Positions 3,163 to 63,447 of a stretch of 64,000 nucleotides of DNA are shown piece by piece. The stretch is taken from positions 157,109 through 221,108 of the IMG/VR virus record IMGVR_UViG_3300020147_000065; one strand, given 5' to 3'. The translations under genes and the position numbers were made by a program. The stretch's first letter is position 1. Each line of letters starts with the position of its first letter. The notes below the pieces were generated by a model that searched no databases, was not told where the DNA came from, and saw nothing but the letters and a program-made list of their open reading frames with translations.

Positions 3163-3605
3163 ATGAAAATTCTTGTGGTGCATCATGTTGAAGAATCTTT
3201 TTGTGGTGACGAATGGCAACAAATGGATAATGCACAAAGTGTTGTCGCAAAATTTTACGTCATATCAACCGCACAAGTTATGATAAGATTATTCTGACCA
3301 CTATGGAGGCATCGAATAGTGGTTATCATGAACTCGATAAATATATCAGCGTGGTAGAAAATTGGTGGTTTGGTTATTCACCTGATGAAGTATCTGAATA
3401 TGATACCGAACCAATGGTTTATAATGAAGACCATGTTTATGAAGGTCACGAATGGCTGCGAGTTTATGACTGGATTAAAGAACTAAAAGGTCATCAAATT
3501 TCCGTTTGCGGTGGTTTTCGTAATGAGTGTTTCTTAGGTCTTACCTCTACACTTGACCATTTAGGTATCAAATATAAAACAATTGAGCAGTGCGTTTATG
3601 GTTGA
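3163..3605 (+). pseudogene. probably frameshifted gene, weakly isochorismatase-like
   Basis: Leaderless ATG 3163 (MKILVVHHVE) stops near 3297; a second frame continues KILRHINR...VCGGFRNEC to 3605. Confidence 0.45.
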
Positions 3606-3663
3606 TAACCATAAACGTGCCCCCCCCCCTTGTCGTGTCCCCGTGGTTTGTTAAAATAGAAGT

Positions 3664-3957
3664 ATGAATTTCTTACGCAACCCTCATTTTGTGGATTTTA
3701 TCATTGATTTCACACAATGCAAAGCAGACGAAAGCGAACGTTTTGCACTTGCTAAGGCTCAGGGTGTAGCCTTCGCAGACTGGCGAATGACCACCGACGC
3801 AGCCGACTTCGTTGTTGATTATTTCAACGCTTTACCCAAACAGGAACAGTTTCGGACGTTGGTTCGTGCCCGTCTCGATATGCGTCAACAGGCCGACGCA
3901 TTAAACGCAAGCGTTGCAGAGTTTACTCAGGTGATAAACGCAGCCCGGTCTATGTAG
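3664..3957 (+). CDS. hypothetical protein (leaderless)
   Basis: C-tract promoter; stop codon inside hairpin. Confidence 0.7.
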   Translation: MNFLRNPHFVDFIIDFTQCKADESERFALAKAQGVAFADWRMTTDAADFVVDYFNALPKQEQFRTLVRARLDMRQQADALNASVAEFTQVINAARSM

Positions 3958-4034
3958 ACCGGGCTTGCCCCCCCGCTTACAATCATTCTTTTTCGTGTTA
4001 TACTTGAATCAATTCAAGAGTTACGGAGAAAGCA

Positions 4035-4253
4035 ATGCGACACGCAAACCACGTAGTTTTACCAACGATCATCACTGAGACAGGAGATTATTTGACGCGC
4101 GGCGGTGAGGTCGTTAACATCACCTCGATTGTCCCTTACTCGGCTTATGGTGCTACCGGCACCTATCATTGTAATATCATAGACCATTGGGATGTTTCAG
4201 GTCGGCTTTATCCCAACATGATAAGTGATAATGATATTGTCGAACGGGTATAA
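4035..4253 (+). CDS. hypothetical protein
   Basis: GGAG RBS. Confidence 0.65.
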   Translation: MRHANHVVLPTIITETGDYLTRGGEVVNITSIVPYSAYGATGTYHCNIIDHWDVSGRLYPNMISDNDIVERV

Positions 4254-4360
4254 TGGACAGGGAACGAAAGTTCCCTGTCTGCCCCCCCCCCGCCGGCACC
4301 CCTTGCATTCTCCCCGTGGTTTGCTATACTCTCAGTATCTTTAGTTAGAGAGGTTACGAC

Positions 4361-4672
4361 ATGAACAACGATGTGAAGATTCGCGGAATCGAGACGCCCG
4401 AACTGTGCCTGTGCTGCGGCTGCCAGGCCGAAATCGAAATCACCACGCCTGATGGTGTGGAGAAAATGTGCTTTTCTGAGGCGTTGCGTCAGTATCCTGA
4501 CCATATGGCCGACTATGGCGAATCCATGTTTCGTGCTATGCAGGATGAGGCCGAAGTATTGGATGCGCAGTTGCAAGAGTTCCGCGCTGAGGCGTGGCAC
4601 GAAGAAAATACACCACCGGCATGGTTTATGGATGAGCCGAACCCTTATATGGGTATGGGCTGCGATTTTTAA
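4361..4672 (+). CDS. hypothetical acidic protein
   Basis: GAGG RBS, own promoter. Confidence 0.7.
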   Translation: MNNDVKIRGIETPELCLCCGCQAEIEITTPDGVEKMCFSEALRQYPDHMADYGESMFRAMQDEAEVLDAQLQEFRAEAWHEENTPPAWFMDEPNPYMGMGCDF

Positions 4673-40943: not shown

Positions 40944-41024
40944 AATCAGCGACCTTACTACGTAGCGTTCTAAAGCAGGGAAGTTCTTGCGAGAGTTTGC
41001 AACCTCTCGTTTTTCCTGCTTAGA

Positions 41025-41417
41025 TGGAGATGTGGGTAATTGAAACCCAGTCTTGAAGTAGTAACAAAGTAGTTTATAGGCTTAGACTGTCTTTTAGTTT
41101 AGCTTTCCACGGGGCGCAGTCGTTCTAATCGTATCGGAAAGCGAGTCACTAATTCATACCGACTAATGACTGTCGTTTGGTGCTTACATTAATTACCTCT
41201 ATCTTACATCGTAAGCAATTCAGTAGAGGTTTGCTTAAACTAAATTAAGCTGCGAGACGGGCCATCTGAGCCTTAGGAGCCATAACTCCACCGAACAAAG
41301 AAACACCCTGATTAAAAACGTTGCCGTTTATAGCATGTCAGCCGTTTAAGGTGTCTGCCAACGAACACCGCCTAAATTCCTTTGATAACAAATCTTCAAT
41401 CGAAACCTGTCATCCCC
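41025..41417 (-). ncRNA. ssrA: tmRNA
   Basis: 5' GGGGATGACAGGTTTCGA; 3' T-arm plus CATCTCCA with G3:U70; tag frame 41325..41245 GNVFNQGVSLFGGVMAPKAQMARLAA*. Confidence 0.93.
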
Positions 41418-41602
41418 AAATTAACGTCGTTTCTGTGCTGCTTTTACTGCATCGTTACACTCTTTGCAAATGCGTTTAGCGTAAGTCTTATGCGGTGGAA
41501 ATATATCCTCGAAATAAAGTAGTTTGCTACCCTTTCGTGGTTCCTTGTGCCAGCAGAAGTAACAACGTATTTTCATAACTTAATTATACTACAGCCGTTC
41601 CC

Positions 41603-42127
41603 TTATGTCAAGGGTTTTGGTTCCCCTGTCAAAAACTTCTTTGTTTTATGTAAGACTGAGAAATAACGCTCTATCTCAGGTAAATACCATTCCAGCGATT
41701 GATTATTCTGCCAACCGGCCTTTGTAGGGGCCGGTTGTCCTGTGCCGTTGCCAGTGTAAATTGACACGTATAACTTGCCTTGCGGGTCAATATATCTCTG
41801 AGCAAGTTGTAGCACTTCTTCTCTAATGTGTTGTTCTTTGATAACACACAGCACGTTGGATATTGTAACCGTCATTGGCCGGAATGTAAGCGCAAGTTCT
41901 AACGATGCGAGATTCATTTGCTGAGGCACGTTATAAGGGTCATAAGGTAAGTTAATAACCTGACGCTCACGTAACACCGCACTCATTAGTTGATAATACT
42001 TTCCTGCCCCAATATCGAGATTCCACTTCAAAGGAATCCACCCATCTTGTTTATCAATGTAACTGACAATAGCCGGAACATGGTTAATGCTGGTATTGGC
42101 AGATGTGTATTCTTGACCTTCAAACAT
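41603..42127 (-). CDS. SAM-dependent methyltransferase-like protein
   Basis: LDIGAGKY, YDPYN, SNVLCVI. Confidence 0.75.
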   Translation of the reverse strand: MFEGQEYTSANTSINHVPAIVSYIDKQDGWIPLKWNLDIGAGKYYQLMSAVLRERQVINLPYDPYNVPQQMNLASLELALTFRPMTVTISNVLCVIKEQHIREEVLQLAQRYIDPQGKLYVSIYTGNGTGQPAPTKAGWQNNQSLEWYLPEIERYFSVLHKTKKFLTGEPKPLT

Positions 42128-46962: not shown

Positions 46963-47056
46963 GGATGGTTGTCCGAGCGGTTTATGGAATGCGTTTGGAA
47001 AACGTATGAGGCATTTCATAGTGTCTCCGCAGGTTCGAATCCTGCACTATCCGCCA
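46963..47056 (+). tRNA. tRNA-Ser(GGA)
   Basis: TTGGAAA loop, long variable arm, GCCA. Confidence 0.9.
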
Positions 47057-47057
47057 A

Positions 47058-47110
47058 GAGAAGCTAACAGCATTAAAATGATTCAGCTTATATCAAAAAC
47101 AATGCTTCTC
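47058..47110 (+). ncRNA. ACAGCAA-stem RNA copy 1
   Basis: GAGAAGC-TA-ACAGCA...GCTTCTC directly after the tRNA-Ser CCA. Confidence 0.6.
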
Positions 47111-47156
47111 GACCTTGACAATTCAATAAAAGTGTAGTAAAATCTACTACATATCT

Positions 47157-47232
47157 GGTGGCGTAGAATAGCGGCTAATTCGCTTGTCTGTCGAACAAGT
47201 TATCGCGGGTTCGAGTCCCGTCGTCACCGCCA
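47157..47232 (+). tRNA. tRNA-Asp(GTC)
   Basis: CTGTCGA loop, GCCA. Confidence 0.9.
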
Positions 47233-47233
47233 G

Positions 47234-47384
47234 AAGAAGCGCACAGCAATCTGCAAAATAAAGCATTTGTGTGAAAAACAAAACAATGTAGGTTCGAATC
47301 CTACCCTGCCCACCAATTAGTGGCAACTACTATCTTAGTTGTATTCAACTGGGCAGGTAGCTAAACTGGAAAACAACGCTTCTT
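47234..47384 (+). ncRNA. ACAGCAA-stem RNA copy 2 enclosing a circularly permuted tRNA-Phe(GAA)-like domain
   Basis: AAGAAGCG/CGCTTCTT stem; 3' tRNA part 47261-47315 precedes 5' part 47351-47371. Confidence 0.75.
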
Positions 47385-47389
47385 GTCTT

Positions 47390-51093: not shown

Positions 51094-51200
51094 TCAAACT
51101 GGCAAGCAGGTGCGTTCTAAGGTATACGGGTTCAGGGTATACACTGGATGCCTATAAGGTAACTTAGAATTGGGGGTTCGAGTCTCCCAGTGCGAGGCAA

Positions 51201-51381
51201 AAGGTAGACACAGCAAACTTTTCACATTACATAAATTGCTAAACTTTTGGTGCTTAGCGCACCTCCGTGAGAGCGGGGCCTCTGAAACCAGTGTGGTGGA
51301 TGAGGGAAACAACTCCGAGGACTCGGCCTCGTTAATCCAGGGCGTAGTAACGAGCTACGATAAAAGCGGAAAAGCTACCTT
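51201..51381 (+). ncRNA. ACAGCAA-stem RNA copy 3 (multi-hairpin cargo)
   Basis: AAGGTAG-AC-ACAGCAA...CTACCTT; follows a T-arm-bearing element at 51101-51199. Confidence 0.6.
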
Positions 51382-51449
51382 GATTTAAATTCTTTGGAGG
51401 ATTGGTAACGATGAAACGAAAACAAACTGAAGACCCAGCCAAAATTTAC

Positions 51450-51817: not shown

Positions 51818-51889
51818 GCGCTTGTAGTTCAGTGGTAGAACACCGACTTCTAGATTCGGGTGTGGCGGGTTCGAATCCTGCCGAGCGCA
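51818..51889 (+). tRNA. amber suppressor tRNA (CTA)
   Basis: CCGAC-TTCTAGA-TTCGG arm in a canonical body. Confidence 0.7.
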
Positions 51890-52020
51890 CTTCATCTTAA
51901 TTAAGGAGCCTACAATGAGCAAGTAGATTGACTTCATGTAGCTGTGTTCAAATAAATCACCACCCGTGGTTAGCCAGATTTCACAAACAACTGACTGACA
52001 ACAAACGGAGATTTAATACA

Positions 52021-54604: not shown

Positions 54605-55774
54605 ATGACAGCAATCCAACTCCCAACACTTTATTGTCGCCGTCAGGACGGCGGAATCAACCAGTGGACTATCGAAGTTGATGGTAGCCGCAAAAGAACT
54701 ATCTCAGGTAAGGTTGGCGGAAAACTCGTCGAATCTGCATGGGAACAATGTGTAGTAAAGAACGAAGGTCGCTCTAATGCGACCACACCCGAATCACAGG
54801 CTTTAGCACAGGCTCAGTCTGACTGGAATAAGAAAAAGGCACGAAAGTATTCGGAGAGTCCCGATACCGTTGATACTGATAAAATTTATCAGTGTATGTT
54901 AGCGAAAGACGTTCGCGGTGAATGGGATAAGAAAACCGAAACGTGGAAGAAACCCCACTGGCCGAAGATTGAGAAGGCATTGAATGAGGGGCAGAAAATC
55001 TTTGTTCAAGCTAAACTTGATGGTATTCGTTGTATCGCCAATAAAGATGGTTTATGGTCGCGTGAAGGAAAGAGATTCGTTTCTTGTCCTCACATCGAAG
55101 AAGCACTCAAACCTTTGTTTGCTGGACAACCCGATTTGATTCTCGACGGTGAGCTATTCAACTTTGAACTGCGTAACGACTTCAATAAAATCGCTTCGCT
55201 TATCAAGCGTCAGAAACCAACAGCAGAGGATATTGCTGAAACTGCTGAAAATGTGCAGTATCATATTTACGACGTTCCTTCTGTGGATGAATTGTTTGAG
55301 AAGCGGTGTCGTGGCTATAATGCGCTCTGCCGTGTTGCTGATAAACCTTTCATCGTTCCAGTCGAAACTTACGAAGTTAGCTCTCTGCAAGAGATTCACG
55401 ACCTCTACGACCTCTTTGCTGAGACACACAAACAGGAAGGCGCGATTATTCGCTTCAACGTGAAGTATCTGAATAAGCGCACCGACCAACTTCTGAAATA
55501 CAAGGTTTTCGTGGACGAAGAATTTGTAATTGTGGACGTTCACAGCGGAGTAGGTAAAGCCGCTGACCTCGCTTGTAAAATGTCCTTCGTGAATGAGGAC
55601 GGTAATCCTTTTGAGGCGACAACAACAGGTAGTGCAGAAACCCGACAGGGTTATCTAAAAGACCGCAATAATTTAATCGGTAAACGTGCAACGGTGCGTT
55701 ACGGAAATCGAACTCCTGATAAGAATGTCCCGCGTTGGGGAAGAATAATCGCTATACGTGATTACGAAAGTTAG
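54605..55774 (+). CDS. ATP-dependent DNA ligase
   Basis: QAKLDGIRC, LDGELF, YHIYDV, EGAIIR, LLKYK. Confidence 0.95.
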   Translation: MTAIQLPTLYCRRQDGGINQWTIEVDGSRKRTISGKVGGKLVESAWEQCVVKNEGRSNATTPESQALAQAQSDWNKKKARKYSESPDTVDTDKIYQCMLAKDVRGEWDKKTETWKKPHWPKIEKALNEGQKIFVQAKLDGIRCIANKDGLWSREGKRFVSCPHIEEALKPLFAGQPDLILDGELFNFELRNDFNKIASLIKRQKPTAEDIAETAENVQYHIYDVPSVDELFEKRCRGYNALCRVADKPFIVPVETYEVSSLQEIHDLYDLFAETHKQEGAIIRFNVKYLNKRTDQLLKYKVFVDEEFVIVDVHSGVGKAADLACKMSFVNEDGNPFEATTTGSAETRQGYLKDRNNLIGKRATVRYGNRTPDKNVPRWGRIIAIRDYES

Positions 55775-56503
55775 TTAGATGGCGAGAGATGTTAAGGCAT
55801 CTCTCGCCTCTTCTGGTGTAGAAAATCCGGTCTTTGCGTATCTTATTCCGTTAATTTTCTTTGCATATAACCATTTATCTCTCTTGTTATAATACACATT
55901 CGGATAAACATGTTGCTTTTTAACAGGAAGAGAAAAACCATCTTTTATTTCTTTCATGTAATTTTCTCGATTACTTGGAAAATTTAATCTTGCTTCTTTA
56001 CCGTAAAGTAATAGTGCTAATTTATCATAATGTTCTGCGGCTTCTTCCTCTGATAAGAAATCACAACGATAATATTCTTTTCCGTTTTTATCTCTTATAA
56101 ATGCTCTCCATTTTTCACTGGATGCATTATGTAAACAAACCCCCACATATCTTTTATTTGAGTTTTTCTTTACTCCTTGTTGACTGGTGGTAGAATTACC
56201 AAAACGAACATCTGCTGGGTTTCTAATTAAGTTATATCCGAATCTTCTGTCCCAAGACTTTAGCTCATTTATCCAGAAATACTCTCTGTCTTTTGCTTTA
56301 TCAAAATCTACAGTTTCTATAGGCTCAATCATAAAATTGTTTATACCATGAGAAGCCATTGCTTTATGTATAATTGTCTTAGCTCTATGACGAGCAAAAC
56401 TTTTGTGACCATTAAATCTAATATTAATTGGTTGGGTTGTTGAACCAATATAAATTTTCCCATTGAGTAGATTTGTGATCTTGTAGATATTGATCTGTTT
56501 CAT
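55775..56503 (-). CDS. GIY-YIG homing endonuclease with AP2 domains
   Basis: IYKITNLLNGKIYIGST; YVGV...WRAFI...EEEAAEHYD...LNFP. Confidence 0.9.
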   Translation of the reverse strand: MKQINIYKITNLLNGKIYIGSTTQPINIRFNGHKSFARHRAKTIIHKAMASHGINNFMIEPIETVDFDKAKDREYFWINELKSWDRRFGYNLIRNPADVRFGNSTTSQQGVKKNSNKRYVGVCLHNASSEKWRAFIRDKNGKEYYRCDFLSEEEAAEHYDKLALLLYGKEARLNFPSNRENYMKEIKDGFSLPVKKQHVYPNVYYNKRDKWLYAKKINGIRYAKTGFSTPEEARDALTSLAI

Positions 56504-56573
56504 ATAAATCCATACGGTTTACACTTGACATTGGTTCCGAAGTTTAGTAAAATAGTATATACAGGAGAAGAAA

Positions 56574-57887
56574 ATGCCACAAATAATTGATGAAGCGCGT
56601 CTGATATGTGCTAAATTCAAAGACGGGAAGTTAGTACATAATAAATTTTACAACATGACATTATACGACGACAACCGAGTGCGAATTTGGTATGGGCGAT
56701 ATGTTGAGGATGGCAGCGGTGGACTGAAAACACAGAGCGACGAAACGGTTCCTGGCGGTCGCGCTTTGTTTGATTCAAAATATCGTGAAAAGACCGGCCC
56801 AAGAAAAGGTTACAAGCCGCTCCCAGTCGTAGCGAACACAACTTCAGATAGTAAAATAGTTGTGGCTAAAGGCACACTTGCTGAGATTGCAGCAAAGCAA
56901 ATCAAGACTAACTCCGATGAAGTGTTTATGCTTATCAAACATCTCGCAGATGTTAATGTGCATCAAATTACTTCACAAACCTCTATCAAGTATGACGCAG
57001 CAACGGGTAGCTTTTCAACACCTTATGGTCTTGTTACTTCTAATGGTATTGATAAGGGGCGGACACTTTTAGGTGAGATTCATAGTCTGCTAACCACGGG
57101 CACCTTCGATAAGCGTTTTGAGACACTTGTTGAAGAATATATGACAATCATTCCACAAAGTGTTGGTCGCCGTTCAATCGGCCCGAAAGAAGTCTTTCCT
57201 AATCTTGATAAAGTCAAGTCACAAAACGACGTGCTTGATGCTCTTGAAGCATCTTTAACCGAGGCCAATAAACCTAAGAAGGAAGAAAAGAGCGACGAAG
57301 CGCAGGAAGTTGAGAAGTTGTTCGACTGCGTATTAGAGATTGTCACAGACCCCGCAGAATATAACCGCGTGGAAAGCCTTTATACTTCTTCTCGTAAAGA
57401 AATGCACGTAGCAGCACGTTTAAAACTACGTAAGGTTTACCGTGTTGTTATTAACCACATGACGCAAGCCTACAATAACCGTAAGGTTAAAGGTAATGAG
57501 CAAGAGTTATGGCATGGAACATCACCGGCTAACGTGCTTTCGATTCTTAAATCAGGCTTCATGATTTCGCCGCCTTCAACGGCGGCAATCGCGGGTAAAA
57601 ACTTTGGTTACGGTGTTTATTTCGCTAATGCCTCAACCAAGAGTTTAAACTACGCACACGGTTATTGGTCAGGCACTTATGCTCGGAAATGCTTCTTGTT
57701 TTTAAACAACGTGGCTCTTGGTAACTATTATGTTCCTGAGAACACCACGCGAAGCAATCCACCAAAAGGCTACGATTCATACTGGGCACAGGCGGGTAAA
57801 TCCTCCTGGTTACAGAATGATGAGATTGTGATTTTCGACACAACTCAGATTGAGCCTACTTACTTGCTGGAATTTGAGGACAACTAA
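56574..57887 (+). CDS. PARP-like ADP-ribosyltransferase (WGR + helical + catalytic)
   Basis: NKFY..WYGR; LWHGT; FGYGVYFA; NDEIVIF (H-Y-E triad). Confidence 0.92.
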   Translation: MPQIIDEARLICAKFKDGKLVHNKFYNMTLYDDNRVRIWYGRYVEDGSGGLKTQSDETVPGGRALFDSKYREKTGPRKGYKPLPVVANTTSDSKIVVAKGTLAEIAAKQIKTNSDEVFMLIKHLADVNVHQITSQTSIKYDAATGSFSTPYGLVTSNGIDKGRTLLGEIHSLLTTGTFDKRFETLVEEYMTIIPQSVGRRSIGPKEVFPNLDKVKSQNDVLDALEASLTEANKPKKEEKSDEAQEVEKLFDCVLEIVTDPAEYNRVESLYTSSRKEMHVAARLKLRKVYRVVINHMTQAYNNRKVKGNEQELWHGTSPANVLSILKSGFMISPPSTAAIAGKNFGYGVYFANASTKSLNYAHGYWSGTYARKCFLFLNNVALGNYYVPENTTRSNPPKGYDSYWAQAGKSSWLQNDEIVIFDTTQIEPTYLLEFEDN

Positions 57888-59077: not shown

Positions 59078-59141
59078 CCCCTTGACAAACTTGCAGGAAC
59101 CACGTATAATATCTTACGTGCTAATGCATACATGATAAAAA

Positions 59142-59215
59142 GCTAAGACGTATGCGACAGGTAAAGCAGCTAAAAGCGGTGTGTTTTGCGGGTTCGATTC
59201 CCGCCGTCTTAGTCA
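59142..59215 (+). ncRNA. tRNA-like unit lacking a normal anticodon arm
   Basis: CTAAGACG/CGTCTTAG acceptor-like stem plus GCGGG-TTCGATT-CCCGC T-arm. Confidence 0.55.
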
Positions 59216-59216
59216 T

Positions 59217-59279
59217 AAGGTTCTAACAGCAAACAATCAAAATTGTTTACCATTTAATCAAACAAATCAAATGAACCTT
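59217..59279 (+). ncRNA. ACAGCAA-stem RNA copy 4
   Basis: AAGGTTC-TA-ACAGCAA...GAACCTT. Confidence 0.7.
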
Positions 59280-59285
59280 GAATTT

Positions 59286-59353
59286 AGGGGAGTAGCTCAC
59301 CGTTAGAGCGTCCGTCTGGAAGGTAGCAGGTTAAATTCCTGCCTCCCCTACCA
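59286..59353 (+). ncRNA. tRNA-like unit with truncated anticodon arm and CCA end
   Basis: AGGGGAG/CTCCCCT-ACCA; D and T arms intact; anticodon arm only TCC-GTCT-GGA. Confidence 0.7.
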
Positions 59354-59354
59354 A

Positions 59355-59455
59355 AAGATAGTTACAGCAATCTTTACAGCATAGCTTAATGGATAAGCAA
59401 AAGTCTTCAAAACTTTAGATTGCGGGTTCGACTCCCGCTGCAATAAAACTATCTT
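59355..59455 (+). ncRNA. ACAGCAA-stem RNA copy 5 carrying an acceptor-less tRNA(UCA) mimic
   Basis: AAGATAGTT/AACTATCTT stem; D-arm, AAAGT-CTTCAAA-ACTTT and T-arm inside. Confidence 0.75.
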
Positions 59456-59461
59456 GTAAAT

Positions 59462-59542
59462 TGGGATGAAGTTCTGAGGTGTTCGGAATATAGGCTCTCC
59501 GCGGAGTCGAAGGGGTAGGTTAAACTCCTACCGTCCCAGCCA
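59462..59542 (+). ncRNA. tRNA-like unit with 6-nt anticodon loop and CCA end
   Basis: TGGGATG/CGTCCCA-GCCA; GGCTC-TCCGCG-GAGTC. Confidence 0.6.
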
Positions 59543-59543
59543 A

Positions 59544-59613
59544 AAGGTCGAGACAGCAACTTAAAACGCATTTCACTGTTAATGAACGACGACGGGTTCG
59601 ACTCCCCTTACCA
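59544..59613 (+). ncRNA. ACAGCAA RNA copy 6 with the 3' part of a tRNA-Asn(GTT)-like unit
   Basis: AAGGTCG-AG-ACAGCAA, TTCA-CTGTTAA-TGAA, GGG-TTCGACT-CCC, ACCA; closing strand not found. Confidence 0.5.
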
Positions 59614-59665
59614 CCCCTTGACAACCCCCCGCGGTTAGTAGTATAATTACTTTGGTTTTGAAAGA

Positions 59666-59699
59666 AAGGTGCGAACAACAACAATACCAATAGCACCTT
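59666..59699 (+). promoter_or_regulatory. ACA(A)CAA-stem copy 7 in the 5' UTR, abutting the RBS of the DUF2828 gene
   Basis: AAGGTGC-GA-ACAACAA...GCACCTT-GGAGG-AATTATG. Confidence 0.65.
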
Positions 59700-59708
59700 G
59701 GAGGAATT

Positions 59709-61190
59709 ATGGCACGAATGAATAGCCTTGTGGCTGCGCTCAACACGACTGTAACTGAGAAGGGCGCTCTCACCAACCGCTCAAGCGGTTCTGCAATGTT
59801 GGATTTCTACGGACAGATGGGCGCTATGCGCGGTCAGTCTGACTCCAACGTAAACTCTACGTTCTCCGCGGCTTTTGCTGCTGAGCGAGCACTTGCTCTC
59901 CGTTCTCTCTTCTATCTCCGTGACGTTCGCGGTGGTAAGGGTGAGCGAAAGACCTTCCGCACCATCCTTGATTGGTTGGTAAAGAATGACCCACAGGTTG
60001 TAATCAATAACCTCGATAACATCTCGTTCTATGGTCGTTACGACGACCTTGCCCGTTTGATTAACTGCGGAAACACTAAGGTGAAGAACGCAGTGGTCGC
60101 AAAGGTCAAGGCTCAGCTTGCGGCTGACAAGAACGACGAACACCCTTCGCTCTTGGCTAAGTGGATGCCCTCCATTAACGCCTCGTCCACAGAGTCTAAG
60201 TCTCTGGCGAAGAAGTGGATTCGTGCTCTCGGTATGTCCGAGGCCGAATATCGTAAGACTCTTTCTGCGCTTCGTGCTCAGATTAAGGTTGTCGAGCGTT
60301 ATATGTGCGCCCGTGATTGGGATTCGATTAACTTCGAGCACGTCCCATCGAACGCTGCAAAGCTGTATCGTAAGGCGTTTAAGACCCGCGCACCTGAGCG
60401 TTACTCTGAGTATCTCGGTGCCGTAGAGAAGGGTGAGAAGACCATCAAGGCTTCTACTCTTTACCCCTACGACCTCGTTCGTCCTTACTTGAAGGCCGGT
60501 GGCTATTACGGTGGACGTGTAAGCGTTGACCGCACTATCGAAGCACAGTGGAAGGCTCTGCCTAACTACCTCGCTGACGATGACACCGACTTCTTGGTAA
60601 TCGCGGACACTTCGGGTTCGATGTTCGACCACTCGTTGGATTTCTTGCCCATCTGCGTATCAGTGTCTTTGGCACTATACTCGGCTGAGCGTAACCGTGG
60701 AGCCTTCAAGGGCTTCTGGATGAACTTCTCAACTTCTCCTACTTTCCAGCAGGTTCGTGGTGAGACTTTGGCTGACAAGATTAGCAACATGGACTACTCT
60801 AACTGGTGTGGTTCTACCAACGTTGACAAGGCTTTCGAGTTGATTCTTTCTCGCGCTCGCGCGGCGAATGTTCCAGCCGACGAAATGCCTAAGATGTTGA
60901 TGGTCATTAGTGATATGCAGTTTGACGGTCACTGCACCGTGACGAACCTTGAGACTTGGAAGAAGAAGTTCGCAACCTACGGTTACGAGGCTCCAACCAT
61001 CGTCTTCTGGAACGTAAACGCACGTCCTGGCCAGTCGCCAATTACTGTAAACGACAAGGGTGTAATGCTTGTTAGCGGTGCGTCCGCAGAGACATTCCGC
61101 GCTGTCCTTTCCGGTAAGAACTTGTCGGCTTACGACGCAATGGTTAATACTCTCAGCAATGAGCGTTACGACCGTGTTGTTGTAGACTAA
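59709..61190 (+). CDS. DUF2828 / TROVE-like vWA domain protein (Ro60-like architecture)
   Basis: TEKGA..SSG..LDF; LFYLRDVRGGKGER; LAKWMPS; LYPYDLV; ADTSGSM; SDMQFD; FWNV. Confidence 0.9.
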   Translation: MARMNSLVAALNTTVTEKGALTNRSSGSAMLDFYGQMGAMRGQSDSNVNSTFSAAFAAERALALRSLFYLRDVRGGKGERKTFRTILDWLVKNDPQVVINNLDNISFYGRYDDLARLINCGNTKVKNAVVAKVKAQLAADKNDEHPSLLAKWMPSINASSTESKSLAKKWIRALGMSEAEYRKTLSALRAQIKVVERYMCARDWDSINFEHVPSNAAKLYRKAFKTRAPERYSEYLGAVEKGEKTIKASTLYPYDLVRPYLKAGGYYGGRVSVDRTIEAQWKALPNYLADDDTDFLVIADTSGSMFDHSLDFLPICVSVSLALYSAERNRGAFKGFWMNFSTSPTFQQVRGETLADKISNMDYSNWCGSTNVDKAFELILSRARAANVPADEMPKMLMVISDMQFDGHCTVTNLETWKKKFATYGYEAPTIVFWNVNARPGQSPITVNDKGVMLVSGASAETFRAVLSGKNLSAYDAMVNTLSNERYDRVVVD

Positions 61191-61207
61191 TCCGGTGTTG
61201 GGCGGGG

Positions 61208-61242
61208 AAAGGGGCAGCTTTCGGGCTGCCCCTTTTCTTTTT
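61208..61242 (+). terminator. intrinsic terminator
   Basis: GGGGCAGC-TTTCGG-GCTGCCCC followed by a T-tract. Confidence 0.8.
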
Positions 61243-62871: not shown

Positions 62872-63447
62872 ATGACACACATCACAAAAGACGTTAATGG
62901 ACTTCCTTTCACTGTTGTTCATGCTTCTGCTCTCGATATTCCTGCTGACTCTATAGTAAACGCGGCCAATTCTGGTCTAAGAGCCGGTAGCGGTATCTGT
63001 GGGGCGATTTATAAAGCCGCAGGTGCCGAAATCCTGAATCGTTATGTCCAAACTCGATTCCCTAATGGGAGTAATACCGGACAATCTGTTATTACCCCTG
63101 CTTTTGGACTTCAAAATCACAGGCGTATTATCCACTCTGTCGGCCCACGATACGATGACCATACTCCACAGGAAGCGGCGCATTATCTGACAATGGCTTA
63201 TTCCTCTGCTATCTATGCTGCTAATTTGGTTGGTAATTCCGTAACGTTCTGTGGGCTATCCACGGGGATTTACGGATACCCTCTTGATGAAGCCGCGTGG
63301 GTTGCTATAAACACTGTAGCCTCACACCTTTATGGTATTGGCTCAAATATGGTTGTGAACTTTGCTCTATTTCAACCAGAAGAGTATCAGGCTTTTGCTA
63401 CTGCTCTCATAAACTGTCAATTTGGTGGGATTACAAGTAATGCCTGA
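62872..63447 (+). CDS. macrodomain ADP-ribose hydrolase
   Basis: IVNAANSGL..GSGICGAIYKAAG; IIHSVGP; LSTGIYGYP. Confidence 0.93.
   Translation: MTHITKDVNGLPFTVVHASALDIPADSIVNAANSGLRAGSGICGAIYKAAGAEILNRYVQTRFPNGSNTGQSVITPAFGLQNHRRIIHSVGPRYDDHTPQEAAHYLTMAYSSAIYAANLVGNSVTFCGLSTGIYGYPLDEAAWVAINTVASHLYGIGSNMVVNFALFQPEEYQAFATALINCQFGGITSNA

What the first reader, a model, noticed from the sequence alone, without database searches (positions are those of the whole stretch)
59618..59711. Handle motif against the DUF2828 RBS suggests translational autoregulation
Seen: after its own TTGACA promoter, the 5' UTR holds a minimal one-mismatch copy (ACAACAA) whose stem ends directly at GGAGG. Inference: free protein binds this weaker site and represses its own translation, matching protein level to RNA ligands. 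This is the best in-window evidence that the protein recognises the motif.
Basis: inference. Interest (0 to 1): 0.68.

Follow-up and report, generated by a model that had tools for sequence, protein, structure and literature searches.

The report
Leader hairpin mimicking Ro-like protein's RNA
The hairpin in front of this jumbo phage's Ro60-like (DUF2828) gene is a stripped-down copy of a conserved, previously undescribed RNA module that lies beside such genes in many phages, and its position against the ribosome-binding site fits, but does not prove, self-regulation of the protein's synthesis.

Summary
A perfect TTGACA-18-TATAAT promoter (59618-59647) precedes a 7-bp hairpin (AAGGTGC 59666-72 / GCACCTT 59693-99). 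Its 20-nt loop starts GA-ACAACAA, and its 3' arm runs straight into GGAGG (59700-04) and the ATG (59709).

Neither the 7-mer nor the fold energy is significant on its own. Comparison supplies the significance. DUF2828 genes in 66 of 74 phage loci are flanked by a module: a covarying 7-bp stem, 0-3 nt, NCAGCAA, an A/C-rich loop, the 3' arm, then G.
- All 158 covariance-model hits lie on the gene's strand and none inside the gene.
- In six whole DUF2828-carrying phage genomes every hit lies near the gene; four phages without DUF2828 give only noise.
- A model built without this clade's leader hairpins ranks the window's hairpin third in the window (19.4 bits, E 0.02).
- The 73% and 53% orthologues keep promoter, hairpin and SD contact, with a compensatory pair change.
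- In 8 of about 35 clades a module abuts the SD.

The protein folds like Ro60. Rfam has no such family.

Binding and repression remain inference. The one mismatch falls on the G that is invariant in 149 of 150 modules. "Weaker site" is not a general rule. Verdict: real conserved leader element; autoregulation plausible (about 0.4).

The parts
59618..59647 (+). Promoter P2: -35 TTGACA (59618-23), 18-nt spacer, -10 TATAAT (59642-47). Predicted start near 59654, which gives a leader of about 54 nt.
   Evidence: 12 of 12 matches to the consensus. (CCTTGACA-N15-19-TATAAT 7 times against 0.01 expected). The hexamers are conserved in L003 and L004 while the spacer diverges.
59666..59672 (+). 5' arm of the leader hairpin, AAGGTGC. 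The family's conserved AG lies at the stem base.
   Evidence: Model alignments. L003 has AAGATGC, the compensatory partner change.
59673..59692 (+). 20-nt loop: GA spacer, core variant ACAACAA (59675-81; the family consensus is NCAGCAA), then the A/C-rich tail CAATACCAATA.
   Evidence: The loop is nearly identical in L003 (GATCAACAACCAATACCAAATA).
59693..59699 (+). 3' arm of the leader hairpin, GCACCTT.
59700..59704 (+). Shine-Dalgarno GGAGG. Its first G is the family's conserved G that follows the 3' arm (CT[T/A]G).
   Evidence: The same CTTGGAGG junction is found in L003 and L004, and the same stem-to-SD abutment recurs in further clades with other junction sequences, such as CTTGGAG in L015/L033/L040/L041 and CTAGAGGAG in L101.
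59709..61190 (+). Gene for the Ro60-like protein (DUF2828 + DUF7788, 493 aa).
   Evidence: Pfam. AF2 model with pLDDT 82.7. Foldseek top hits are TROVE/Ro60 structures, E 1.8e-8 to 1e-4.
61204..61239 (+). Terminator-like hairpin with a T-run after the gene.
59082..59110 (+). Promoter P1 (TTGACA-17-TATAAT) in front of the ncRNA cluster.
59214..59283 (+). Canonical module M1: AAGGTTC TA ACAGCAA ... GAACCTT G. It directly follows a tRNA-like unit (59144-59213).
   Evidence: 34.7 bits with R1 (E 1.7e-6) and 40.1 bits with R2. Weak YrlA-like hit over 59159-59255.
59352..59459 (+). Canonical module M2: AAGATAG TT ACAGCAA [whole tRNA with anticodon UCA, 59374-59447] CTATCTT G.
   Evidence: 31.5 bits with R2, E 7.5e-5. 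tRNA.
59544..59623 (+). Possible degenerate module M3: AAGGTCG AG ACAGCAA, with no clean 3' arm. The only pairing found overlaps the -35 of P2. Not detected by the models.
47055..47114 (+). Remote canonical module in the tRNA array, directly after tRNA-Ser.
   Evidence: 28.7 bits with R1 and 28.9 with R2. tRNA.
47231..47388 (+). Remote module with a 127-nt insert that holds a partial tRNA-like unit, between tRNA-Asp and tRNA-Pro.
   Evidence: 20.8 bits with R2..
51198..51385 (+). Remote module with a 158-nt insert in the tRNA array.
   Evidence: 21.7 bits with R2..

Best explanation
The 59666-59699 hairpin is a minimal, leader-embedded copy of a conserved RNA module. The module is a 7-bp stem, a short spacer, NCAGCAA and an A/C-rich loop, and it accompanies DUF2828 genes in phages. 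It otherwise occurs as non-coding units scattered through their tRNA arrays.

The DUF2828/DUF7788 protein is a distant structural relative of Ro60 (a helical-repeat ring plus a vWA domain). It most likely binds these modules as its RNA partners.

The leader copy ends at the base before GGAGG. Protein bound there would keep the 30S subunit off the SD and lower translation of its own mRNA. When free modules are abundant they would titrate the protein and relieve the block.

Shown: the anatomy; the hairpin's homology to the module; stem covariation; strand and neighbourhood specificity; conservation of the promoter-hairpin-SD arrangement in orthologues; the Ro60-like fold.

Inferred: protein-module binding, binding to this G-to-A variant, and repression.
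For: (1) A model built from 41 modules of other phages, none of them from the window or L003 and none a leader hairpin, ranks the hairpin third in the window: 19.4 bits, E 0.024. R2 gives 21.3 bits, above all hits in T4, T5, Bxz1 and P-SSM2.

(2) Orthologous leaders keep the arrangement. L003 (73% protein identity) has ccccTTGACA..TATAAT..AAGATGC-loop-GCATCTT-GGAGG, with a G:C to A:T compensatory change and a near-identical loop. L004 (53%) has AGATAG-CAACAGCAG..-CTATCT-TGGAGG. In both, the hairpin is separated from any ncRNA array by protein-coding genes, so it is a leader element in its own right.

(3) The family signal is strong.
- 50 of 56 non-redundant upstream regions hold NCAGCA. Own-arm stems have a median of 8 bp against 5.5 in the arm-swap control.
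- Covariation: 87% of cells paired against 60% shuffled, 300 against 109 double changes, 0 of 500 shuffles as high, slid controls 45% or less.
- All 158 hits are on the gene strand (p 5e-48) and none is inside the gene.
- G-U pairs are tolerated, which points to an RNA on the + strand.

(4) Whole-genome scans are specific.
- All 11 hits in Felix O1, LeBron, Synechococcus phage B3, Bacillus phage PK-3 and Campylobacter phage F336 lie within about 2 kb of the gene (p about 1e-18).
- KVP40, which carries DUF2828, has two hits. The four DUF2828-less phages give only noise.

(5) In 15 of 45 loci the nearest module ends 10 nt or less from the ATG. That is 7 of 32 clades at 60% identity, plus L101.

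(6) SD-abutting copies are more often off-consensus: 7 of 16 against 19 of 135, p 0.008. The loci are not phylogenetically independent.

(7) The fold is Ro60-like: Foldseek hits to 9kop, 9l5y, 2i91, 1yvp and 2nvo over the full length.

(8) Bas63 gp130 is described by its authors as Ro60-like, sits next to tRNA genes and is a functional counter-defence gene, and they guessed at RNA partners (10.1101/2024.10.10.617714).
Against: There is no binding or expression data. No RNA reads are available.

The mismatch replaces the one base (G4 of the core) that is invariant in 149 of 150 modules. The only other exception is the orthologue L003. The protein may therefore not recognise this copy.

In 25 or more of about 35 clades no module touches the SD. 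Felix O1, LeBron and EfV12 have none in the leader. Feedback is thus not a family-wide property.

Abutment can arise from simple packing of a module array against the gene.

In-locus comparison of model scores shows no consistent 'weaker leader copy'. For example, the abutting copies of L033 and L031 score highest in their loci, and L101's has the canonical core.

The hairpin leaves most of the SD single-stranded without protein, so the hairpin alone is no repressor.

The score of 19-21 bits is at the upper edge of genome-wide noise. Its weight comes from position and orthology.
Confidence: 0.4

Rival explanations
1. The hairpin is a genuine module copy, but its role is not feedback. One option is that it is the last unit of a processed precursor: P1 has no terminator before the gene, so the ncRNAs and the mRNA may be one transcript. 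In that case it would mark a processing site, a 5' stabiliser, or a loading site that places the protein on its RNA partners. Contact with the SD would then be a by-product of compaction.
For: No terminator lies between P1 and the gene. Modules form tandem arrays that run up to the gene, at all distances from 0 to several hundred nt, and also lie downstream of it (34 hits). Modules are interspersed with tRNAs, and about 15 of 74 start 20 nt or less after a tRNA end. This suggests a link to tRNA-precursor processing. Most clades lack SD contact.
Against: In the window, L003 and L004 the hairpin has its own conserved promoter. In L003 and L004 it is also separated from any array by protein-coding genes. 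The distance distribution has a peak at 4-10 nt from the ATG rather than a smooth decay. The SD's first G coincides with the module's conserved 3' G in several independent clades.
Confidence: 0.3
2. The element works without the phage protein. The loop (AAC)3-AAU is an unstructured A/C-rich tract presented on a stem. It could act as a translational enhancer or ribosome standby site. It could also be a binding site for a host factor that reads A-R-N repeats, such as the Hfq distal face or Crc/Hfq 'CA motifs', which repress translation when they lie next to an SD. This comparison rests on my own knowledge of those systems.
For: The loop reads AAC AAC AAC AAU by inspection. A/C-rich tails (AAAACAA) are a general feature of the module loops. 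The G-to-A change makes the leader copy a purer A-R-N/CAA repeat. The SD is largely unpaired in the predicted ensemble.
Against: The host is unknown (soil metagenome) and its Hfq status cannot be tested. The stem, the spacer, the 3' G and the position all match the DUF2828-specific module. That module is absent from phages without the gene. L004's orthologous leader keeps CAGCAG, not a CAA repeat.
Confidence: 0.15
3. Chance resemblance: an ordinary leader hairpin that happens to carry a common A/C-rich heptamer.
For: ACAACAA is not enriched in the window (11 against 12.5 expected). The fold z-score is -1.43. The model score lies close to the noise ceiling of whole genomes (19.9 bits).
Against: The hit lies on the right strand and in the roughly 90-nt leader of the one gene to which the family is tied. 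By my estimate from the noise rate, the chance of that is about 2e-4. Two orthologous leaders score 21.9 and 28.0 bits at the same place, with a compensatory change.
Confidence: 0.03

Closest known systems
Ro60 / Rsr with Y RNAs (YrlA, Rfam RF02553), including phage Ro60-Yrl pairs (Chen et al. 2014, PMC4201824; Thermus phage phiLo, PMC12135203)
   Same: A ring-plus-vWA protein has small structured RNAs encoded within a few kb on the same strand, often several per locus, and linked to tRNA-like domains. In the window M2 encloses a whole tRNA, and other inserts carry T-arm-like or anticodon-loop-like hairpins. Chen et al. used the same argument of localisation and strand.
   Different: The protein does not match Pfam TROVE and has no sequence hit to solved Ro60 structures. 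The similarity is structural only. The RNA signature is NCAGCAA at the 5' side of a loop closed by a 7-bp stem. It is not the GNCGAAN0-1G / CGAA bulged helix of Y RNAs. Rfam's YrlA model gives only a sub-threshold 17.4 bits on a neighbouring unit and nothing on the hairpin. I found no leader copy or autoregulation described for Ro60 in the papers read.
Autogenous translational operators that mimic the protein's main RNA ligand: E. coli thrS operator (tRNA-Thr anticodon-arm mimic next to the SD), ribosomal-protein leaders (L1, S8, S15, L20), T4 gene 43 and gene 32 operators, MS2 coat/replicase hairpin (from my own knowledge)
   Same: A reduced copy of the ligand's recognition element is placed in the protein's own leader, directly against the SD. 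Such copies are often of lower affinity than the main ligand, so that synthesis is repressed only when the ligand is saturated.
   Different: Here neither binding nor repression has been shown. The leader copy lacks the family's invariant G. The arrangement is present in only about a quarter of the clades.
Bas63 (Felixounavirus) gp130, a Ro60-like counter-defence protein against Ppl (PhageMaP preprint 10.1101/2024.10.10.617714)
   Same: Its authors describe gp130 as structurally like Ro60 and as lying directly upstream of a run of tRNA genes. Felix O1's DUF2828 gene lies in the same position. The gene-plus-tRNA region is more than 95% identical in many Felixounaviruses. The authors guessed that Y-like RNAs lie among the tRNAs. 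The models find ACAGCAA modules between exactly those tRNAs in Felix O1.
   Different: No RNA partner was identified there. Felix O1 has no module in the gene's leader, so the feedback idea cannot be transferred to it. That gp130 belongs to the DUF2828 family is my inference from position and description; it was not tested here.
Hfq/Crc A-R-N ('CA') motifs next to ribosome-binding sites (from my own knowledge)
   Same: An AAC/AAU repeat lies directly upstream of an SD, and such motifs are associated with translational repression.
   Different: Those motifs are single-stranded host-factor sites without a closing stem. They show no linkage to a particular phage gene.

Membership tests
DUF2828-associated NCAGCAA stem module (defined here; models R1 and R2) | 7-bp closing stem with covarying arms and an AG...CU base | tested here: met
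   AAGGTGC/GCACCTT, all seven pairs standard. Family covariation.
DUF2828-associated NCAGCAA stem module (defined here; models R1 and R2) | Core NCAGCAA 0-3 nt after the 5' arm, with G4 invariant (149 of 150) | tested here: not met
   The spacer GA and the positions C2, A3, C5, A6 and A7 fit. G4 is A (ACAACAA), as it is only in the orthologue L003.
DUF2828-associated NCAGCAA stem module (defined here; models R1 and R2) | A/C-rich 3' half of the loop, and a conserved G right after the 3' arm | tested here: met
   The loop tail is CAATACCAATA, and G59700 follows the arm.
DUF2828-associated NCAGCAA stem module (defined here; models R1 and R2) | Same strand as a DUF2828 gene and near it | tested here: met
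   The 3' arm ends 9 nt before the ATG, on the + strand. All 158 family hits are co-oriented with the gene.
DUF2828-associated NCAGCAA stem module (defined here; models R1 and R2) | Significant score with a model that did not see the sequence | tested here: inconclusive
   R1 gives 19.4 bits, E 0.024, third of 128 kb. Noise in other genomes reaches 19.9 bits with R2. The hit is convincing only together with its position and the orthologues.
Y RNA / YrlA (Rfam RF02553) | Ro-binding helix with GNCGAAN0-1G, plus a tRNA-like domain, reaching Rfam's gathering score | tested here: not met
   There is no hit on the hairpin. The best YrlA match in the region is 17.4 bits against a gathering score of 69, at 59159-59255.
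Autogenous translational operator (ligand mimic at the SD) | The element resembles the protein's main RNA ligand | tested here: inconclusive
   Resemblance to the module is shown. That the module is the protein's ligand is inferred from co-localisation only.
Autogenous translational operator (ligand mimic at the SD) | The element overlaps or abuts the ribosome-binding site | tested here: met
   The stem ends at 59699 and GGAGG starts at 59700. This is conserved in L003 and L004.
Autogenous translational operator (ligand mimic at the SD) | The protein binds the leader and lowers its own translation | not testable with these tools
   This needs binding assays and reporters. No RNA data exist for this phage.
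Ro60 / TROVE protein family (for the protein) | Sequence match to TROVE (Pfam) or to solved Ro60 chains | tested here: not met
   Pfam gives only DUF2828 and DUF7788. A profile search of PDB sequences finds no Ro60.
Ro60 / TROVE protein family (for the protein) | Helical-repeat ring followed by a vWA/MIDAS domain | tested here: met
   AF2 model with pLDDT 82.7. The top 13 Foldseek hits are all Ro60/TROVE structures over about 500-600 aligned columns, E 1.8e-8 to 1.2e-4, TM 0.30-0.53 normalised by the model. vWA/MIDAS domains follow.
Hfq/Crc A-R-N motif | At least three A-R-N triplets, single-stranded, next to the SD, and a host Hfq that reads them | not tested
   The triplets AAC AAC AAC AAU are seen by eye. 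The host is unknown.

The most novel reading that the evidence does not exclude
DUF2828/DUF7788 proteins and the NCAGCAA stem modules form a widespread phage ribonucleoprotein system that has not been described. It would be a second, Y-RNA-independent branch of the Ro60 world. It is built into phage tRNA arrays, in Felix O1-like, Listeria LP-125-like, cluster-L mycobacteriophage, cyanophage, Campylobacter and KVP40-like phages and in many jumbo phages. In some lineages, including this one, the system has placed a minimal copy of its RNA handle on the protein's own ribosome-binding site, so that protein synthesis is tied to the supply of RNA partners.
Probability: 0.35. Interest if true: 0.85.

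Novelty: new variant of a known kind. Interest (0 to 1): 0.72.

Why it matters
DUF2828 proteins occur in more than 700 sequenced phages, several of them used as models or in biocontrol. One member has been reported to defeat a bacterial defence system. Their RNA partners were only guessed at.

The analysis gives a concrete, searchable RNA signature for those partners. It is absent from Rfam 15.

It also gives a simple, testable regulatory hypothesis: a leader hairpin that mimics the ligand. If confirmed, this would be, as far as I could find, the first case of feedback control in the Ro60 superfamily. It would also be a new example of regulation by RNA mimicry in a virus.

The leader pair also offers a natural experiment on recognition. 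The window and L003 carry A at core position 4, whereas L004 and all other modules carry G.

Tried and rejected
- Motif counts alone: ACAGCAA and ACAACAA are not enriched in the window, so they were rejected as evidence.
- Fold energy of the leader: z = -1.43, not informative.
- Megablast against phages and peptide-pattern scans of viral and metagenome contigs with the single protein found no close relative other than the window's own contig.
- The closest homologue, P0002 (73%), has no retrievable DNA.
- Profile search of PDB sequences found no Ro60 hit. Only the fold search showed the relation.
- Rfam, at gathering and at E-value thresholds, has no family for the module.
- Sequencing runs: the only holders are DNA contigs of soil metagenomes, identical in sequence.
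- A simple regex-plus-stem search is too permissive, giving many 6-bp chance stems. It was replaced by covariance models.
- 'Leader copies score lower than distal copies': checked by eye on the scores and found inconsistent, so it is not claimed as a rule.
- M3 (59544-) could not be given a convincing 3' arm, and neither model detects it.
- A small ORF behind the module at 51198-51385 overlaps a tRNA and was not pursued.
- An outer helix in the MFE fold (59653-59 with 59703-09) is made only of A-U and G-U pairs and is not evidently conserved, so it is not claimed.
- The big representative-protein search, complex prediction and other genetic codes were not used, since none was needed.
Full report
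**1. What is at 59618-59711**

The window is the last 64 kb of a 221,108-bp virus record from a soil metagenome. It carries 36 tRNA genes and a tmRNA gene.

- TTGACA at 59618-23, 18 nt, TATAAT at 59642-47.
- AAGGTGC at 59666-72.
- The loop GAACAACAACAATACCAATA.
- GCACCTT at 59693-99.
- GGAGG at 59700-04 and ATG at 59709.

The promoter matches the consensus 12 of 12. The extended form CCTTGACA-N15-19-TATAAT occurs seven times in the window against 0.01 expected, including in front of tRNA arrays and the tmRNA gene. It is therefore a real promoter class, and the hairpin lies in a leader of about 54 nt.

The ORF 59709-61190 is a DUF2828 + DUF7788 protein.

**2. Is the observation more than chance?**

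Not on its own.
- ACAACAA occurs 11 times in the window against 12.5 expected.
- The canonical ACAGCAA occurs 10 times against 9.05.
- The leader's fold energy has z = -1.43.

The case rests on comparison with other phages.

**3. Orthologous leaders**

The protein has thousands of relatives and matches in 704 sequenced phages. Only two relatives are close.

*L003 (73% identity).* The locus has the same ccccTTGACA / TATAAT promoter. Its hairpin is AAGATGC - GATCAACAACCAATACCAAATA - GCATCTT, followed at once by GGAGG. Compared with the window, the stem has changed G:C to A:T on both sides. The loop is almost unchanged, whereas the promoter spacer and the stretch between the -10 box and the hairpin have diverged.

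*L004 (53% identity).* The locus again has the promoter, then AGATAG - CAACAGCAGTTAATTTATTAAAGA - CTATCT - TGGAGG.

In both loci protein-coding genes lie directly upstream. The hairpin is therefore a leader element in its own right and not the tail of an RNA array.

**4. A module family around DUF2828 genes**

I printed the 110 nt upstream of the start codon for 80 IMG/VR loci. The same design recurs:
- an (A/T)AG-based stem whose arms differ from phage to phage but stay complementary;
- 0-3 nt of spacer;
- (A/T/G)CAGCA(A);
- a loop of 13-90 nt with an A/C-rich 3' half;
- the 3' arm, and then G.

In 56 non-redundant upstream regions, 50 hold NCAGCA. The stem anchored next to it has a median of 8 bp with its own downstream sequence, against 5.5 bp with that of other loci.

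An alignment of 41 modules from other phages (A2) shows covariation well above shuffled and slid controls. I built model R1 from it. R1 finds 158 hits (E 0.1 or less) in 74 loci. All are on the strand of the DUF2828 gene (p 5e-48). Of the 118 hits among the 150 aligned ones whose locus has a mapped gene start, 84 lie upstream, 34 downstream and none inside the gene.

On the 150-sequence alignment A3:
- 87% of cells pair, against 60% when shuffled;
- there are 300 double-sided changes, against 109;
- none of 500 shuffles reaches these values;
- G-U pairs are common, which fits an RNA read from the + strand.

Because A3 was fitted to the model, it leans towards the structure. The unfitted alignment A2 gives the same answer.

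**5. Specificity**

| Genome | DUF2828 | Model hits |
|---|---|---|
| Felix O1, LeBron, Synechococcus phage B3, Bacillus phage PK-3, Campylobacter phage F336 (678 kb in all) | yes | 11 hits at E 0.1 or less, all within about 2 kb of the gene and on its strand (p about 1e-18) |
| KVP40 | yes | 28.5 and 24 bits, on the gene's strand |
| T4, T5, Bxz1, P-SSM2 | no PF11443 | nothing above 19.9 bits, E 0.09-0.6 |

Rfam 15 matches only tRNAs in 14 such loci. It matches nothing relevant in the window, apart from a sub-threshold YrlA match on a neighbouring tRNA-like unit.

**6. Where the window's hairpin stands in the family**

R1 was built without any sequence from the window or L003, and without any leader hairpin. 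Scanning the 64 kb on both strands with filters off, it gives:
- M1 (59214-59283): 34.7 bits;
- 47055-47114: 28.7 bits;
- the leader hairpin 59663-59703: 19.4 bits, E 0.024;
- M2 (59354-59459): 15.6 bits, penalised for the tRNA inside its loop;
- everything else is noise.

R2, built from A3, gives six + strand hits at E below 0.03, among them the leader at 21.3 bits.

The hairpin fits the stem, the spacer (GA), five of the six conserved core positions, the A/C-rich tail and the 3' G. It fails at core position 4, where it has A. That position is G in 149 of 150 modules, and the single exception is the orthologous hairpin of L003.

With 13 nt after the core, it is among the shortest of the family, together with L003 and L010. 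'Minimal one-mismatch copy' is therefore accurate. However, the mismatch is at the most conserved base.

**7. Contact with the SD**

In 15 of 45 loci with a mapped start, the nearest upstream module ends 10 nt or less from the ATG, measured from the model's 3' end. There is a peak at 4-10 nt. By protein clustering at 60% identity this concerns 7 of 32 clades.

A further relative fetched afterwards, L101 (51% identity), has GTGCCTAG-AGGAG-aagaac-ATG with a canonical core.

In several of these clades the module's conserved 3' G is the first G of the SD, for example CTTGGAG(G).

SD-abutting copies carry an off-consensus core more often: 7 of 16 against 19 of 135, p 0.008. The loci are not independent, however. 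In several clades the abutting copy is canonical and scores as high as the distal ones. A 'weaker leader site' holds for the window and L004 but is not a rule.

**8. The protein**

AlphaFold2 with the 38-sequence alignment gives pLDDT 82.7 and pTM 0.74. Foldseek's best 13 PDB matches are all Ro60/TROVE structures:
- Thermus phage phiLo, 9kop and 9l5y;
- Xenopus, 1yvp and 2i91;
- Deinococcus Rsr, 2nvo;
- human Ro60.

These matches span the whole chain, with E from 1.8e-8 to 1e-4. vWA/MIDAS domains follow.

Sequence methods do not see this relation. The annotation 'Ro-like RNA binding protein' used for the mycobacteriophage homologues is thus structurally justified.

**9. Literature**

- No paper on the function of DUF2828 turned up.
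- Chen et al. 2014 (PMC4201824) found YrlA RNAs, with the motif GNCGAAN0-1G, within 4 kb and on the strand of TROVE-annotated Ro60 genes, including 22 phages.
- The phiLo study (PMC12135203) found two Y-like RNAs with a CGAA motif upstream of its Ro60.
- The PhageMaP preprint (10.1101/2024.10.10.617714) reports Bas63 gp130 as Ro60-like, lying directly upstream of tRNA genes and countering the Ppl defence system. It guesses that some of the 'tRNAs' are Y RNAs.

Felix O1's DUF2828 gene lies in just that position. The models place ACAGCAA modules between its tRNAs. None of these papers describes the NCAGCAA module or a leader copy.

**10. Mechanism**

The best-supported reading has three steps.
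- The Ro60-like protein binds the stem-plus-NCAGCAA handle of the modules.
- The leader carries a bare handle whose 3' arm touches the SD.
- Bound protein would exclude the 30S subunit, and excess free modules would relieve the block.

This is the logic of the thrS, ribosomal-protein and T4 gene 43 operators (my own knowledge).

What is shown is homology, conservation and geometry. Binding and repression are inferred. Without protein the SD is predicted to be mostly open, so the hairpin by itself should not repress.

The rivals are:
- a processing, stability or loading role without feedback;
- a protein-independent A/C-rich enhancer or host-factor (Hfq-type A-R-N) site;
- chance.

I rate autoregulation at about 0.4, the first rival at 0.3, the second at 0.15 and chance at 0.03. 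The remainder, about 0.12, is unassigned.

**11. Limits**

- There is no transcript data. The only runs that hold the sequence are DNA contigs from soil, and they are identical to the window.
- Only two close orthologous leaders could be read. The contig of P0002 gave no DNA.
- E-values from the models are rough, because the calibration is shortened.
- No other genetic code was used, although the window encodes tRNAs with UCA and CUA anticodons.

Noticed in passing
window 59144-59617: The cluster between P1 and P2 alternates tRNA-like units with modules. The tRNA-like units are 59144-59213 (with a perfect T-arm), 59286-59350 (with a shortened anticodon arm) and about 59470-59541. The modules are M1, M2 and M3. 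M2's loop encloses a complete tRNA with anticodon UCA (59374-59447), whose acceptor strand itself starts with ACAGCA.
   Followed up: partly
window 51818-51890 and 59374-59447: Two suppressor-type tRNAs are predicted, with anticodon CUA (amber) and UCA (opal). I did not check whether the phage reads through stops, and I did not use another genetic code.
   Followed up: no
window 59570-59590; L061, L064, L066, L069 and others: Many module inserts hold a mini hairpin with a 7-nt loop CUGUUAA, CUUUUAA or CUGCUAA. This is shaped like an anticodon loop (GUU for CUGUUAA). 16 of 147 distinct inserts carry one of these three loops. It hints at mimicry of an anticodon arm.
   Followed up: partly
G000:C1:133763-133823 (- strand), outside the window: A further strong module hit (32.2 bits) lies about 83 kb from the DUF2828 gene and on the opposite strand. 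It is the only strong hit found away from the gene or the tRNA region in this genome.
   Followed up: no
window 54605-57887 and 62872-63447; L004 1-35: The DUF2828 gene is flanked by an ATP-dependent DNA ligase-like gene, a GIY-YIG endonuclease, a WGR-PARP gene (56574-57887) and a Macro-domain gene (62872-63447). A PARP gene also lies upstream in L004. This may be a linked ADP-ribose / nucleic-acid-repair gene set.
   Followed up: no
window 41022-41417 (- strand): A phage-encoded tmRNA (89.4 bits) with one of the CCTTGACA...TATAAT promoters in front of it (41583-41613, - strand).
   Followed up: no
L086 (Felix O1) 3731-4426; L089 (LeBron) 3446-3506 and 3648-3700; L088 (Listeria LP-125) 1650-1799; L087 (Synechococcus phage B3): Well-known phages carry unannotated NCAGCAA modules next to their DUF2828 gene. 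In Felix O1 they lie between the annotated tRNAs. In LeBron they lie just downstream of gp53. In Listeria phage LP-125 the locus also holds an RtcB-like ligase.
   Followed up: partly
window 56380-56455 (- strand): A weak model hit (17.2 bits, E 0.21) with UCAACAACC, resembling L003's leader loop, lies inside the 5' part of the GIY-YIG ORF. It is probably noise.
   Followed up: no
62 loci with modules: DUF2828 genes sit inside tRNA arrays: 283 predicted tRNAs in 62 loci of about 7 kb, 279 of them on the gene's strand. About a fifth of the modules start within 20 nt of a tRNA 3' end.
   Followed up: partly
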